From assembly GCA_025603075.1 (NCBI GenBank), contig MU626309.1, positions 52,968 through 116,967 of the forward strand: 64,000 nucleotides of DNA, written 5' to 3'. Both the position numbers and the translations under genes were made by a program. The notes beneath the pieces are model-generated. The model was not told the origin of the DNA, searched no databases, and saw only the letters and a list, made by a program, of their open reading frames with translations. This stretch comes from Neoconidiobolus thromboides FSU 785. Its lineage: Eukaryota; Fungi; Entomophthoromycota. This document shows positions 46,047 through 50,031 of the stretch, in pieces; position 1 is the first letter of the stretch, and the number at the start of each line of letters is the position of its first letter.

Positions 46047-46053
46047 TGAGTCA
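46047..46053. promoter_or_regulatory. TGAGTCA, Gcn4/CpcA (AP-1-type) consensus site
   Basis: Exact consensus ~150 bp upstream of the LEU2-fusion ATG. A 7-mer can occur by chance. Confidence 0.35.
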
Positions 46054-46198
46054 TCAACTATCATGAATCATAAAGAAAAGTGAACACTAAAAATAAAAGA
46101 TAAAAAGTATATAAAGCTAAAAGAGAGTCCAAACTAATCAACTTTAATAAAAAAAAATAAGATTATAAAACAGAAAATATTAATAGTCAAAATCAAAA

Positions 46199-49100
46199 AT
46201 GAAACAAGTTAAAATAGTAGTATTGCCGGGAGATGGTATAGGGCCAGAAGTCACTTCACAAGCTGTTCGAGTATTAAAAGTAGTGGGAGATTATTTAGAA
46301 GCTCAAAATACTCATCAATTTCAATTTATTGAAAAAAAATTTGGTGGTGCTGCCATTGATGCTTATAGTAAGGATTTTTATTAAGTTTACTTTATTCCTG
46401 TTCATTATTAATCCTATTACTTAGATGATCCCTTCCCAAAAGACACAAAAGAAGCCATTTTAAACTGTGATGCTATTTTATTGGGGGCCGTAGGTGGTCC
46501 TCAATGGCCAAAATTAATTGATGTTAATGATCAATCTAAAGGATATGGACCTCGACCTGAACAAGGATTATTAGATTTACGTAAATTATTAGATTTATAT
46601 GCTAACATAAGGCCTGTATTTTTTCCATCTCAATCTTTAATTGATAATAGTCCATTAAAACCAGAAATTGTTCAAGGTACTGAATTTATTGTTATTAGAG
46701 AATTAGTGGGTGGTGTTTATTTCGGAGATAGAAAAGAAGGAGATGAGGATGGTAAAGGTAAAAATTGACTAATTTTAATGTACGTTTTTAATATTAATAT
46801 TTTTTTAGCTTTAGACACAATGCCTTATAGTAAAGAAGAAATCTATAGGATAGCTAAGTTAGCTGGAGATATGGCTATGAAATCAGAGCCACCATTAAAA
46901 ATTCATTCTATAGATAAAGCTAATGTATTAGCTACTAGTCGACTTTGGCGTAAAGTAGTAACTGAAACAATAGAAAAAGAATATCCAAAAATAGTATTAG
47001 ATCATCATTTAGTAGATTCTGCAGCCATGTTAATGATTCAAAAACCCACTGCATTAAATGGAATTGTATTAACTGAAAATATGTTTGGTGATATTTTATC
47101 GGATGAAGCTTCGGTTATTCCAGGTTCTTTAGGTTTGATGCCATCTGCTTCACTTAATGGCTTACCAAATGAAAATTCTTCAGCTATTGGTTTATATGAA
47201 CCAATTCATGGTTCAGCTCCAGATATTGCTGGTAAAAATATAGCTAATCCAATTGGTACTATTTTATCTGCTGCTATGTTATTAAAATATTCTTTATCTT
47301 TAACGAAAGAAGCAGATCATATTGAAAGAGCTGTACGTAAAGTATTAGATTTAAAAACTCAAGGTGGTATTGGTTTAAGAACTAAAGATTTAAAAGGAGA
47401 AGCAACAACCAATCAAATTGGTGATAAAATAGTTGAATATTTAAACAATTCATTAATTAGTGGTAGAATATCTCCAATACCAAGATCCTTAAAAAATAGA
47501 TTATTAACAAGACCAAATGGAAGAAGAGGCATGAATTTATGTGAAAAGATATTATGCAATGCAGCTATTGGACTAGAAGCACCAGGTAATATTAGACCAG
47601 GGGATATGATATGTGTCAATGTCGATTGGACTTTAGCTAGTGAATTAACATGGAAAGGTATGAATAAAACATATGAAGAAATGGGAAGACCATCAATTCA
47701 TAGAAATGATCGATTTTGGTTAGCTATTGATCATACAGTTGATCCAAGAATTAATCACTTACCTAAACCAAAAGAATTAATTCAATCTTCAGAATCATTT
47801 GCTAAAGAAGCTGGTTTGATTGATTTCCATGGTCCAAATCAAACGATTCTTCATACTGAATTTTACAGACAACGTGCTCAACCTGGTATGGTAATTTGTG
47901 GTGCTGATTCACACTCTTGTTCTGCTGGTGGACTTGGAGCATTTGCTGTTGGCTTAGGAGCAGCCGATGTAGTCATGCCATTAGTAACCGGAGAAACTTG
48001 GTTTAAAGTACCCGAAGTAGTTGAAATTAAATTTGTTAACCAACCACCCTTTGGTATTGGTGGTAAAGATGCCATTTTATATGTATTAGGAGAATTAAAA
48101 CGTAATACGGTGGCATTTGAAAGAGCAGTGGAATTTACTGGTCCTGGTTTGAAATATTTAAGTTGTGATGCTCGATTTGCTATTGCTAATATGACCACCG
48201 AATTTGGTGGTATTGCTGGTGTATTTGAAGCTGATGAAATTACAGCGGCTTATATAGCTAAACGTAAATTACCACAACATAAAAATTCAGCCATTTATTT
48301 CCGTAAAGATGAAGATGCCGAATATGCTGCTTCCTACGAAATCGATCTTTCCAAAGTGGATTCTTTAGTAGCTTTATATCCATCACCAGATAATGTAGTA
48401 TCCGTTGAAAAAGCATCTGACACTAAATTAGATGGTGTATTTATTGGTGCTTGTACAACGGCAGAAGAAGATCTTATTTTGGCTGCTTTGGTACTTGAAG
48501 AAGGATTAAAGAAAGGGATGGTACCAGTTGTCGGTGCTAAACGAAGAGTTACACCAGGCTCGGTACAGATTGTAGCTAAATTACGCAAACTAAATTTATT
48601 AGAAATTTATGAAAAATGTGGCTTTGAAATTGGTGCACCCGGATGTTCTTATTGTATTGCTGTTGCAGCTGATAAAGCAGATGAAGGGGAAGTTTGGTTA
48701 TCATCCCAAAACCGTAACTTTAAAAATCGAATGGGTAAAGGTTCCATTGGTAATTTAGCTTCTGCAGCTACAGTAGCTGCTTCTTCTTTTGAAATGAAGA
48801 TCACCGATCCTAGACCATTTTTAGATACTATTGATCGTGAACGTTACGAACAAATGTTAGAAATTTGGTTAGCTAAAGGGGAACCTATTGTATTATCGGA
48901 ACCTAATCCAGTATATATTGGTAAACATGATCATGGGGTGGATGGTACTGGTGCAACTACTCAAAGCAGTGTCCAAGAAGATAGCAATGAGACTGAAGAG
49001 TCCTCATTCCAAGGAGTTATTAAGGGCAAAGCCCAAGTATTTGGCGATCATGTAGATACTGATGCTATTATCCCAGCACAATTTATGCCCGGTATTAATG

Positions 49101-49612
49101 ATGCTGATTTGGGTACACATGCTTTCCAATACGTTAAACCCGATTTTGTAGAAAAAGCAAACCAAGGCTTTGATATTGTAGTTGGTGGTGTTGGATTTGG
49201 TTCTGGATCTTCAAGAGAAGAAGCACCAAGAGCATTAAAAGGAGCTGGTATTAAAGCAGTGATAGCTAAATCATTTGCTTTTATTTATTCTAGAAACCAA
49301 CCTAATATGGCTTTATTGGGTATTACTTTACCCGATGAAAAGTTTTATGAATTAGTATCCGAAGGTAGTGAAATTGCTATTGATGTTACTAAACGTACTA
49401 TCTACGTTGGTGACCATCAATTTAAATTTCAATTATCAACGATGGAAGAAAATCTTATGGCCGGTGGTGGTGTGTCCGAAATGTATTCCAAGTTTGGTAG
49501 TAAATTGTTTAGGGTTGCTATGGGAGAAGAAAACCCAAAGAAACATAACAAAACTAAGAGTAAAACTAAGGAATGCCCTTCAGCAGCTGATAACGAGGTC
49601 TTAGCTTGGTAG
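46199..49612 (+). CDS. LEU2: Fusion of 3-isopropylmalate dehydrogenase with an aconitase-family [4Fe-4S] dehydratase (large and swivel domains), ~1,100 aa
   Basis: Exons 46199-46367, 46425-46757 and 46809-49612. IPMDH motifs ([45 protein letters not shown]) run without stop or intron into [46 protein letters not shown] and [10 protein letters not shown]. Confidence 0.93.
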
Positions 49613-49837
49613 TTTTGGAGAATCATAATTGTTATATAATTTAAATTTCTATTTTGTAGTTTTCATATTAGTCAAAGGAATTCACTGCTTTAAAAGCATT
49701 TGTTGAAATAATAAATTAGCTTTTTTATTTATAATATTATTTGGTATTTCATATTATTATCAGAATTAAATAATTATACAATAGTATAAAATTATAGTGT
49801 ATACATTCCAGTTGTAAAGTAGTTTGTTTAACAACAT

Positions 49838-50031
49838 AGTAATGTCTTTTTGGTTTCATTACTTTTCCATCTTTTAAGCACTATTTGAGCGGAAAAATTG
49901 TTAGTAAAATCCTTAAATATATCCCCATATATATGACTGTATTTTTTTGTTTAAGAATTTTATTAATAATTTTCTACTTAAATAGTACTTTAAAAAAATG
50001 GAAAAAGTAATGAAACTAAAAAAACACCCTC
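49838..50031. mobile_element. Two opposed MITE copies (49838-49926 +, 49935-50031 -)
   Basis: A plus copy ends ATCCCC, then an (AT)n spacer, then a reverse copy ending CACCCTC-AT. Confidence 0.8.

What the first reader, a model, noticed from the sequence alone, without database searches (positions are those of the whole stretch)
46199..49612. Single ~1,100-aa polypeptide fusing LEU2 dehydrogenase to a complete aconitase-family dehydratase
Seen: the last exon (46809-49612) is one uninterrupted frame. The IPMDH domain ends near 47450, a ~25-aa basic linker follows ([27 protein letters not shown]), and a LeuC-like large domain starts at 47531. After a short acidic linker, a LeuD-like swivel domain starts near 49020. 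The three [4Fe-4S] cysteines (GACTT, PGCSYC) and the dehydrogenase metal/NAD motifs look intact. Established: in yeasts and filamentous ascomycetes the isomerase (LEU1) and dehydrogenase (LEU2) are separate genes catalysing consecutive steps. Inference: this could be a bifunctional isomerase plus oxidative decarboxylase that channels an intermediate in leucine synthesis or another 2-oxoacid chain-elongation pathway. I do not know of a characterised example.
Basis: partly seen in the sequence, partly recalled or inferred. Interest (0 to 1): 0.8.

Follow-up and report, generated by a model that had tools for sequence, protein, structure and literature searches.

The report
Fused leucine dehydrogenase–isomerase gene
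This insect-pathogenic fungus makes one 1,101-residue protein that joins the leucine-pathway dehydrogenase (Leu2) to an unusual iron-sulfur dehydratase; the same fusion is conserved across most early-branching fungi, seems to stand in for the separate LEU1 and LEU2 genes of yeasts, and has not been tested biochemically.

Summary
Exons 46199-46367, 46425-46757 and 46809-49612 encode a 1,101-aa protein identical to the NCBI model for Neoconidiobolus thromboides FSU 785. One spliced 3,589-nt transcript contig covers the whole CDS, junction included.

- **N-terminal half:** passes the LeuB equivalog cut-off, with all catalytic residues intact.
- **C-terminal half:** a complete aconitase-family module with three Cys ligands and the catalytic Ser. 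It belongs to a deep lineage closest to archaeal IPMI/homoaconitase, not to canonical LEU1 (30% identity).
- **C-terminus:** a disordered tail ending L-A-W, like the cytosolic Fe-S targeting tail of Leu1.

The fusion occurs across several early-branching fungal lineages, Neolecta, some holozoans and Physarum. Fused and stand-alone LEU2 interleave along the species tree.

Pezizomycotina copies have a dead or vestigial dehydrogenase but an intact dehydratase. That points to fission by duplication and degeneration.

Three things argue for a bifunctional leucine enzyme (confidence about 0.65):
- a published KOG table with no canonical LEU1 in two fusion-bearing genomes;
- linkage to ILV genes in Mortierellaceae and Calcarisporiella;
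- a Gcn4 site upstream.

I could not check for LEU1 in this genome, and channelling is untested. The scan noted the same stretch before (s1-241667).

The parts
46047..46053 (+). Gcn4/CpcA-type site TGAGTCA, 146 nt upstream of the ATG
   Evidence: 7 sites in the 64-kb window against 4.6 expected, so the site is only suggestive by itself. It lies just upstream of the transcript 5' ends (46153-46180).
46199..46367 (+). Exon 1 (aa 1-56 plus 1 nt); starts directly with the IPMDH Rossmann motif [12 protein letters not shown], with no presequence
   Evidence: the splice joint 46367/46425 appears in RNA contigs of four runs.
46368..46424 (+). Intron 1, 57 nt, GT..AG, phase 1
   Evidence: joint table. 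A gap at the same position in Basidiobolus LEU2 suggests a shared intron.
46425..46757 (+). Exon 2 (aa 57-168)
46758..46808 (+). Intron 2, 51 nt, GT..AG, phase 1
   Evidence: One search reports the joint as 46755/46807 with a 2-nt ambiguity; the placement 46757/46809 reproduces P0001 exactly.
46809..49612 (+). Exon 3: rest of the dehydrogenase, the linker, the whole dehydratase and the stop TAG (49610-49612)
46199..47422 (+). 3-isopropylmalate dehydrogenase domain (aa 1-372, introns included in the span). Key residues: R109/R119/R148, Y155, K204, D237, D262/D266, the [10 protein letters not shown] loop and the [13 protein letters not shown] motif
   Evidence: TIGR00169 leuB, 453.4 bits against a cut-off of 353.2; residues; Foldseek TM 0.92-0.93 to Thermus IPMDH.
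47423..47530 (+). Inter-enzyme linker (aa 373-408), ending in the conserved basic RPxGRR motif just before Met409
   Evidence: alignment; pLDDT below 50 at aa 386-391.
47531..48922 (+). Aconitase-family large (LeuC/HacA-like) part, aa 409-872. Key residues: D475-H476, D534-S535-H536, N628/E632, cluster ligands C716 (48452), C780 (48644), C783 (48653), and N802-R803...R808
   Evidence: Pfam Aconitase 5.5e-76. Best PDB matches are M. jannaschii HACN and IPMI large subunits, 2.9e-58 and TM 0.90-0.91. Residues.
48923..48997 (+). Acidic, disordered linker between the large and swivel parts (aa 873-897)
   Evidence: pLDDT below 50.
48998..49531 (+). LeuD/HacB-like swivel domain (aa 898-1075), with the substrate loop [13 protein letters not shown] (49055-49093) and the catalytic S968-S969-R970 (49208-49216)
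   Evidence: TIGR02087 LEUD_arch, 119 bits against a cut-off of 109; alignments to 2PKP, 3VBA and 1V7L; loop conserved in all eukaryotic members.
49532..49609 (+). Disordered C-terminal tail (aa 1076-1101) ending ...C-x10-L-A-W: a putative recognition signal for the cytosolic Fe-S assembly (CIA) targeting complex
   Evidence: pLDDT 32-36. A terminal L-[AS]-W occurs in most full-length orthologues, fused or not, and almost all of them end in Trp. Leu1 uses such a tail (bioRxiv 10.1101/2023.05.19.541488); canonical LEU1 P0250 ends LEW.
49710..49731 (+). AATAAA (49710-49715) and the poly(A) addition site (about 49731)
   Evidence: (loose A-run behind 49731 in X2).

Best explanation
The gene encodes a cytosolic, bifunctional enzyme of leucine biosynthesis. 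The C-terminal [4Fe-4S] dehydratase module is a single-chain LeuC+LeuD-like enzyme of an archaeal-type lineage. It would isomerise 2-isopropylmalate through isopropylmaleate to 3-isopropylmalate. The N-terminal Leu2-type domain would then oxidise and decarboxylate that product with NAD+ to 4-methyl-2-oxopentanoate. IPMDHs are obligate homodimers, so the likely assembly is a central dehydrogenase dimer carrying two dehydratase modules on roughly 36-residue linkers. The floppy C-terminal tail ending in Trp would recruit the cytosolic Fe-S assembly machinery. In fusion-bearing fungi this one gene would do the work of yeast LEU1 plus LEU2.

Shown here: one gene, one mRNA, an intact LeuB-class dehydrogenase, an intact aconitase-family active site, and wide conservation.

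Inferred: isopropylmalate as the dehydratase substrate, absence of LEU1 from this genome, the quaternary structure, and any channelling.
For: (1) Single spliced transcript and exact agreement with the public gene model.
(2) The dehydrogenase passes the LeuB equivalog cut-off. No other N. thromboides IPMDH appears among the 120 best stand-alone hits, which run down to 58% identity. On the tree, fused and stand-alone LEU2 interleave in species-tree order, so the fused domain is the LEU2 orthologue.
(3) In a published KOG table, canonical LEU1 (KOG0454) is 0 in R. irregularis and M. elongata, both fusion-bearing, each with one KOG0786. It is 1 or more in all nine genomes from stand-alone-LEU2 lineages, although B. 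graminis scores 0 for KOG0786 itself (PMC4771724 Table S5).
(4) The fused gene sits in a branched-chain amino-acid cluster, ILV2-ILV5-ILV6-fusion, in Mortierella. It lies next to ILV5 in Dissophora and next to ILV6 in Calcarisporiella.
(5) Bacterial relatives (45-55% identity) are clustered with an IPMS/homocitrate-synthase-like gene (22 of 80 loci), an IPMDH-class gene (21) and a thiolase gene (23).
(6) The specificity loop has no Arg: FMPG here, against YLRT in methanogen homoaconitase and YLVY in methanogen IPMI.
(7) The protein has a Leu1-like C-terminal Trp tail and no presequence.
(8) A Gcn4 site lies upstream.
(9) An earlier scan note reports an isopropylmalate synthase gene elsewhere in this genome (s1-269450; I did not check it).
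Against: I could not search the N. thromboides genome for canonical LEU1.

The dehydratase scores below the cut-offs of all NCBIfam IPMI, HACN and aconitase models except LEUD_arch.

In Pezizomycotina, which have LEU1 and LEU2, the dehydratase stays intact while its dehydrogenase partner decays. There it has a role that is independent of, or additional to, LEU1.

Two bacterial loci carry canonical leuCD right next to the relative. The bacterial relatives also have a different loop, FCHL, so the operon evidence speaks to the chemistry class, not the exact substrate.

The KOG table assigns one KOG per protein, uses gene catalogues from about 2013, and covers only two fusion-bearing genomes. The Gigaspora transcriptomes score 1 for KOG0454, which could be a fragment of the fusion or a real LEU1.
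Confidence: 0.65

Rival explanations
1. Only the dehydrogenase half serves leucine synthesis. The fused dehydratase acts on a different 2-hydroxy-acid (citramalate, another alkylmalate, or an unknown substrate), and a separate canonical LEU1 elsewhere in the genome does the isopropylmalate isomerisation. The fusion then couples two related but distinct activities, or simply co-regulates them.
For: The dehydratase belongs to a lineage far from LEU1 (branch lengths of 5+5 substitutions per site; 30% identity). It passes no IPMI equivalog. It persists with an intact active site in Pezizomycotina that already have LEU1, while its dehydrogenase dies. Canonical leuCD coexists with the bacterial relative in L026 and L058. 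The closest solved enzyme, M. jannaschii IPMI, is itself a dual isopropylmalate/citramalate isomerase.
Against: KOG0454 is absent from two fusion-bearing genomes. A fusion kept for this long usually joins steps of one pathway. The gene is linked to ILV genes. No alternative synthase partner is known in fungi.
Confidence: 0.25
2. Both halves belong to a non-leucine 2-oxoacid chain-elongation or secondary-metabolite pathway, of the kind that uses homologous synthase, isomerase and dehydrogenase trios, and the fungus has separate LEU1 and LEU2.
For: Bacterial relatives sit with a divergent HMGL-like synthase, a thiolase and sometimes a wax-ester synthase, which is not a classic leu operon. The Pezizomycotina copies are sporadic and fast-evolving.
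Against: The dehydrogenase is a bona fide LeuB equivalog with the IPM-specific RPEQGLLxLR loop. No second IPMDH from this species appears. The protein is 60-84% conserved over the searched region (query residues 150-650) across the early-branching fungal fusions. It is linked to ILV genes.
Confidence: 0.07
3. Artefact: two neighbouring genes joined by an assembly or annotation error, or by read-through.
For: None found. Some public 'stand-alone' relatives are clearly truncated models of the fused gene, which shows that annotation of this locus is error-prone in the other direction.
Against: The frame is continuous with no stop or start signal at the junction. A single spliced contig with 0 mismatches, plus junction-bridging contigs in four runs from three studies, cover it. 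The same architecture appears in more than 90 independent proteomes.
Confidence: 0.01

Closest known systems
Leu2 / LeuB 3-isopropylmalate dehydrogenase (yeast LEU2; Thermus thermophilus IPMDH, PDB 4F7I, 2Y41)
   Same: The N-terminal 372 residues have the same fold (TM 0.92-0.93, 43-44% identity to Thermus IPMDH). All substrate, metal, catalytic and NAD residues are present. The domain passes the LeuB equivalog cut-off and is orthologous to stand-alone fungal LEU2 on the tree.
   Different: It is covalently followed by a roughly 690-residue Fe-S dehydratase. Stand-alone LEU2 ends where the linker begins.
Methanocaldococcus jannaschii isopropylmalate/citramalate isomerase (LeuC 4KP1/4NQY + LeuD 3VBA) and homoaconitase (4KP2 + 2PKP)
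   Same: These are the closest solved relatives of both the large and the swivel parts. They share the Cys ligands, the SSR motif and the general layout.
   Different: The archaeal enzymes have two subunits, whereas here the two parts are one chain with an acidic linker. The specificity loop is FMPG rather than YLVY (IPMI) or YLRT (HACN). Scores fall below the IPMI_arch and hacA_fam cut-offs.
Canonical fungal Leu1 (LeuC-LeuD fusion of bacterial type; reference P0250, Golovinomyces)
   Same: Same superfamily, same large-then-small domain order, cytosolic, and a C-terminal tail ending in Trp for the CIA machinery.
   Different: Only 30% identity. It lies on the far side of the longest branch in the family tree. 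TIGR00170 leuC scores 150 against a cut-off of 560. LEU1 is never fused to LEU2.
Single-chain bacterial 'PRK07229/PRK00402-like' aconitase-family proteins of Myxococcota, Planctomycetota, Ktedonobacterales and others
   Same: 45-55% identity over the whole module, the same fused large+swivel architecture, and sister clade to the eukaryotic module. They are often clustered with an IPMDH-class gene and an IPMS-like synthase.
   Different: They are not fused to the dehydrogenase. The loop is FCHL(T), not FMPG. They have no Trp tail. Their function is also uncharacterised.
Aspergillus fumigatus AcoC (XP_747512), the third 'aconitase-like' protein of Fazius et al. 2012 (PMC3556520)
   Same: It is probably the Eurotiomycete form of this dehydratase module: described as only 15% identical to AcoA, barely expressed and not studied further. 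Similar roughly 800-aa Aspergillus, Thermoascus and Penicillium proteins are in the family.
   Different: I did not have the AcoC sequence, so the identity is unverified. The Eurotiomycete proteins seen here keep only a 90-130-aa vestige of the dehydrogenase.

Membership tests
3-isopropylmalate dehydrogenase (LeuB/Leu2, TIGR00169) | Whole-domain score above the curated equivalog cut-off | tested here: met
   453.4 bits against 353.2 for aa 1-372. The next-best models (homoisocitrate, tartrate and isocitrate dehydrogenases) all fall far below their cut-offs.
3-isopropylmalate dehydrogenase (LeuB/Leu2, TIGR00169) | Catalytic Tyr/Lys, three substrate Arg, Asp metal triad, IPM-specific E-x-G-L-L loop, NAD motif | tested here: met
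   R109, R119, R148, Y155, K204, D237, D262, D266, [10 protein letters not shown] and [10 protein letters not shown] are all present.
3-isopropylmalate dehydrogenase (LeuB/Leu2, TIGR00169) | NAD-dependent oxidative decarboxylation of 3-isopropylmalate | not testable with these tools
   Needs an enzyme assay or complementation of leu2.
Aconitase superfamily [4Fe-4S] (de)hydratase | Three Cys cluster ligands plus the Asp-His, Asp-Ser-His and Asn/Glu motifs and the Ser-Ser-Arg catalytic motif on the swivel domain | tested here: met
   C716, C780, C783; D475-H476; D534-S535-H536; N628/E632; S968-S969-R970. These are invariant or nearly so across 51 fused orthologues. Pfam Aconitase 5.5e-76 and Aconitase_C 8e-17.
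Canonical isopropylmalate isomerase (LEU1 / LeuC TIGR00170 + LeuD) | Score above the leuC equivalog cut-off; clade membership | tested here: not met
   150 bits against 560, in two stretches. 30% identity to LEU1. Separated from it by the deepest branch of the tree.
Archaeal-type IPMI / homoaconitase (TIGR02086 IPMI_arch, TIGR01343 hacA_fam, PRK00402; small subunit TIGR02087) | Scores above the subfamily cut-offs for the large and small parts | tested here: inconclusive
   Large part: 305/385 (PRK00402), 281/386 (hacA_fam) and 275/410 (IPMI_arch), all below cut-off. Small part: LEUD_arch 119.4 against 108.95, above cut-off. So this is the nearest known family, but the protein is an outlying lineage.
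Archaeal-type IPMI / homoaconitase | Specificity loop on the small subunit: Arg for a gamma-carboxylate (HACN), hydrophobic for an alkyl group (IPMI) | tested here: inconclusive
   The loop is F-M-P-G. It has no Arg, so it is unlike HACN, but it is not the YLVY of IPMI either. This is compatible with an uncharged substituent and is not proof.
True aconitate hydratase (PRK07229 / TIGR01342 / AcnA / mitochondrial) | Score above the equivalog cut-off | tested here: not met
   297/612, 239/719, 159/825 and 134/686.
Cytosolic Fe-S (CIA) client with C-terminal targeting tripeptide [LIM]-[DES]-[WF] | Unstructured C-terminal extension ending in Trp or Phe with the consensus tripeptide | tested here: inconclusive
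   The tail is disordered and ends L-A-W. The Leu and the terminal Trp fit, but the middle residue is Ala where the published motif has D/E/S. L-[AS]-W is conserved in most full-length orthologues and almost all end in Trp. Binding to the CIA targeting complex is untested.

The most novel reading that the evidence does not exclude
The IPMDH-dehydratase fusion is the ancestral leucine module of fungi, and perhaps of the common ancestor of fungi, holozoans and amoebozoans. On this reading, the stand-alone LEU2 of Dikarya, Mucorales and Chytridiales is a fission product, made by duplication and complementary degeneration. The bacterial-type LEU1 then took over the isomerase step in those lineages only. 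Most early-branching fungi would therefore make leucine with an isomerase that is not homologous in the orthology sense to the textbook enzyme. The surviving dehydratase-only copies in Pezizomycotina (AcoC-like) would have a new, unknown function.
Probability: 0.45. Interest if true: 0.7.

Novelty: new variant of a known kind. Interest (0 to 1): 0.6.

Why it matters
Leucine biosynthesis is textbook fungal metabolism. It supplies the classic LEU1 and LEU2 markers and is a proposed antifungal target. If the reading holds, most early-branching fungi run two of its steps on a single polypeptide, including arbuscular mycorrhizal fungi, Mortierella, insect pathogens and rumen fungi. The isomerase half would come from a different lineage than LEU1.

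That would change pathway annotation. These genes are now labelled only '3-isopropylmalate dehydrogenase', 'aconitate hydratase' or 'hypothetical'. It would also explain apparent LEU1 gaps in these genomes and give a natural system for testing substrate channelling between an oxygen-labile Fe-S isomerase and its dehydrogenase.

The fusion also offers a clean example of gene fission by duplication and complementary decay: an intact fusion, then a dead dehydrogenase, then a vestige. The conserved L-A/S-W tail adds a predicted client to the cytosolic Fe-S targeting system.

Tried and rejected
**Searching for LEU1 in this genome**
- I tried to learn whether N. thromboides or other fusion-bearing fungi have canonical LEU1. 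A bacterial LeuC from locus L026, searched against the representative library, yielded a canonical fungal LEU1 (P0250).
- The last homology search was designed to exclude short bacterial LeuC by length (P0241, region 407-887). It returned only Gemmatimonadota LeuC and synthase-LeuC fusions, so it says nothing about fungi.
- The Atlas search with P0250 gave only Ascomycota-dominated clusters.
- P0255 and P0265, which looked like possible early-eukaryote LEU1, are bacterial LeuC with inserted domains.
- Scan notes for this genome under 'aconitase', 'LeuC', 'Leu1' and 'dehydratase' hold no LEU1 record. That is not evidence of absence.

**Literature and supplements**
- The supplements of three genome papers had nothing on isopropylmalate enzymes.
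- The M. alpina metabolic model lists the hydro-lyase and the dehydrogenase under different gene ids, but gives no sequences.

**Gene calling in the bacterial loci**
- Two naive gene-calling schemes failed on the high-GC bacterial loci because of shadow ORFs. I replaced them with clustering of all ORFs plus Pfam.

**Readings rejected**
- True aconitase, homoaconitase, or a tartrate/D-malate dehydrogenase paired with maleate hydratase: rejected on model scores and residues.
- Mitochondrial location: there is no presequence.

**Context in this window**
- There is no ILV gene next to the fusion in this window.
Full report
**What is there**

The ORF 46778-49612 on the plus strand is one open frame of 944 codons. 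Pfam places the C-terminal two-thirds of Iso_dh, a full Aconitase domain and Aconitase_C in it. Two short upstream ORFs carry the missing N-terminal Iso_dh segments. Joining 46199-46367, 46425-46757 and 46809-49612 at GT..AG borders, both in phase 1, gives 1,101 residues. These are letter-for-letter identical to the NCBI protein '3-isopropylmalate dehydrogenase [Neoconidiobolus thromboides FSU 785]'. The contig is MU626309.1 of GCA_025603075.1.

**One transcript**

Four public RNA runs from three studies hold the locus. In run X1 a single 3,589-nt contig runs from 46180 to 49876. Both introns are removed, there is no mismatch, and no joint lies anywhere in exon 3. In X2, X5 and X6 other contigs bridge 47400-47600. 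X2 ends in an A-run after 49731, 16 nt past an AATAAA. Assembled contigs cannot exclude minor internal starts. Even so, with the open frame and the conservation described below, an artefact is very unlikely.

**The dehydrogenase half**

Residues 1-372 score 453 bits on the LeuB equivalog model, against a cut-off of 353. All other Iso_dh family models fail. The three substrate arginines, Tyr155, Lys204, the Asp triad, the isopropylmalate-type [10 protein letters not shown] loop and the NAD motif are intact. The AlphaFold model (pLDDT 85.7) superposes on Thermus IPMDH at TM 0.92-0.93. There is no N-terminal presequence.

**The dehydratase half**

Residues 409-1101 form a complete aconitase-family enzyme in one chain. 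It has:
- a large part holding the Asp-His, Asp-Ser-His and Asn/Glu motifs and the three cluster cysteines (C716, C780, C783);
- a disordered acidic linker;
- a swivel domain with the Ser-Ser-Arg motif.

It is not a LEU1. Identity to a canonical fungal LEU1 (P0250) is 30%. The leuC model scores 150 against a cut-off of 560. In a tree, the eukaryotic module and its bacterial sisters are separated from LEU1 and E. coli LeuCD by the longest branch.

Its nearest solved relatives are the two-subunit isopropylmalate/citramalate isomerase and homoaconitase of M. jannaschii. Only the small-subunit model LEUD_arch is passed. In the loop that sets specificity in those enzymes, homoaconitase has YLRT and the isomerase has YLVY. 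This protein and all its eukaryotic relatives have FMPG. That means no arginine for a gamma-carboxylate, which fits an uncharged side chain but proves nothing. An earlier scan note on the same stretch (s1-241667) reached the same 'neither Leu1 nor Lys4' reading.

**C-terminal tail**

The last 26 residues are disordered and end L-A-W. Most full-length orthologues, fused or not, end L-[AS]-W, and almost all of them end in Trp. A conserved Cys lies about 11 residues upstream of the terminal Trp. A preprint shows that yeast Leu1 and other cytosolic Fe-S proteins are recognised by the CIA targeting complex through a C-terminal [LIM]-[DES]-[WF] tripeptide on such a tail (10.1101/2023.05.19.541488). 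LEU1 P0250 ends LEW. This argues for a cytosolic, cluster-loaded, working enzyme.

**Distribution**

The Iso_dh+Aconitase+Aconitase_C architecture (about 1,040-1,130 aa) appears in:
- Entomophthoromycotina, Kickxellomycotina and Zoopagomycotina;
- Mortierellomycotina, Glomeromycotina, Endogonales and Calcarisporiella;
- several chytrid orders, Blastocladiomycota and Neocallimastigomycota;
- Neolecta, some Sordariomycetes and one Aspergillus;
- outside fungi, Physarum and holozoan protists.

Unfused modules of about 700 aa occur in oomycetes, Creolimax and Syssomonas. Many 'short' hits are truncated models of the fused gene.

**Evolution of the dehydrogenase**

In a tree of fused domains and stand-alone LEU2 proteins, the two forms interleave in species-tree order:
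- fused Jimgerdemannia is sister to stand-alone Umbelopsis plus Mucorales (98);
- stand-alone Basidiobolus groups with fused Syncephalis;
- chytrid forms are mixed;
- the non-fungal fusions fall outside a fungal clade (96).

Basidiobolus LEU2 is truly stand-alone and appears to share intron 1 with this gene. So the fused domain is the LEU2 orthologue, not a paralogue. No second IPMDH of N. thromboides appears among stand-alone hits listed down to 58% identity.

**Fission caught in the act**

In Sordariomycete and Aspergillus thermomutatus fusions the dehydrogenase is degenerate. RPE has become EPE, the NAD motif is deleted, and in A. thermomutatus Lys, Tyr and a metal Asp are lost. LeuB scores drop to 289 and 208. 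Proteins of about 750-830 aa from Aspergillus section Nigri, Thermoascus, Penicillium and Xylogone keep only a 90-130-residue vestige of the dehydrogenase C-terminus and linker (E 1e-9 to 1e-12). In all of them the dehydratase active site is intact.

This is the pattern expected from duplication followed by complementary decay. It also shows that the dehydratase has a use of its own in fungi that already have LEU1 and LEU2 (A. nidulans luA, leuD and leuE, PMC8262921).

**Is the dehydratase the leucine isomerase?**

For:
- Table S5 of PMC4771724 lists KOG0454 (LEU1-type dehydratase) as 0 in R. irregularis and M. elongata. Both bear the fusion and each has one KOG0786. The same KOG is 1 or more in Rhizopus, four basidiomycetes and four ascomycetes, although B. 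graminis scores 0 for KOG0786 itself.
- In Mortierella sp. GBAus27b (two assemblies) the fused gene lies in an ILV2-ILV5-(ECH)-ILV6-fusion cluster. In Dissophora it is next to ILV5, and in Calcarisporiella next to ILV6. In M. alpina a stand-alone Iso_dh occupies the same slot.
- A Gcn4-type TGAGTCA sits 146 nt upstream of the ATG (noted before as s1-241839).
That matches PMC2904702 for early-branching fungi.
- Of the 80 bacterial loci fetched, 22 hold an HMGL-like synthase, 21 an IPMDH-class gene (397 bits on PRK03437 against a cut-off of 393) and 23 a thiolase near the relative. Most of these loci are Myxococcota.

Against:
- The Pezizomycotina evidence above.
- Canonical leuCD lies beside the relative in two bacterial loci.
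- The bacterial loop is different, FCHL.
- The KOG evidence is thin.
- I could not search this genome for LEU1 (see Tried and rejected).

**Verdict**

The best reading is a bifunctional Leu2 plus non-canonical isopropylmalate isomerase working in the cytosol (about 0.65). The main rival is that the dehydratase has another substrate (about 0.25). The architecture is publicly annotated but, in the literature I could search, uncharacterised.

Noticed in passing
L088:1-10433, L089, L090:4268-10373, L091:5680-11457, L087:1468-7236, L001:5612-9219: Branched-chain amino-acid genes are physically clustered in early-branching fungi. Mortierella sp. has ILV2-ILV5-(enoyl-CoA hydratase)-ILV6-fusion. Dissophora has ILV5-fusion. 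Calcarisporiella has ILV6 divergent from the fusion. M. alpina has ILV5-ILV6-stand-alone Iso_dh-2-oxoacid dehydrogenase E2. Basidiobolus has ILV5 next to LEU2.
   Followed up: partly
P0241, P0410-P0528: Many Gemmatimonadota and metagenome proteins of about 850-1,000 aa fuse an HMGL-like synthase (PF00682 + PF22617, sometimes with the LeuA_dimer domain) to a canonical LeuC. This is a different fusion of consecutive leucine-type steps.
   Followed up: no
L083:3001-5196 (P0255); L085:3001-5127 (P0265): These are bacterial canonical LeuC proteins with a foreign domain inserted inside the Aconitase domain: a GNAT acetyltransferase in one and a HAD hydrolase in the other.
   Followed up: no
L007, L008, L010, L011, L016, L018, L024, L028, L029, L032, L033, L038, L049, L050, L056, L063, L068, L074, L077: A conserved, mostly Myxococcota gene cluster: aconitase-family gene, small ORF (~221 aa, no Pfam hit), thiolase, HMGL-like synthase, and (nearby) an IPMDH-class dehydrogenase. 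In a subset a wax-ester synthase/DGAT lies just upstream. Its pathway is unknown.
   Followed up: partly
window 49574-49609 (aa 1090-1101): A nearly invariant Cys lies about 11 residues before the terminal Trp (C-x10-L-A-W) in fused and unfused orthologues. It sits inside the disordered tail, and its role is unknown.
   Followed up: no
window 47101-47161, 47447-47645, 49161-49441: RNA contigs of runs X2 and X5 (coded organism B) differ from the window at scattered single bases, several spaced at multiples of three. They probably come from another strain or a close species with mostly third-position changes. At some sites two variants co-occur in one run.
   Followed up: no
window 46368-46424 vs L001:8169-8232: A tblastx gap suggests Basidiobolus LEU2 has an intron at the same place as intron 1 of the fusion gene. 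Intron 2 is absent there.
   Followed up: partly
P0020 and P0059 (Dissophora globulifera); P0047 and P0073 (Tieghemiomyces parasiticus): Two full-length fused paralogues occur in single genomes. These are the raw material for the duplication-and-decay route to fission.
   Followed up: no
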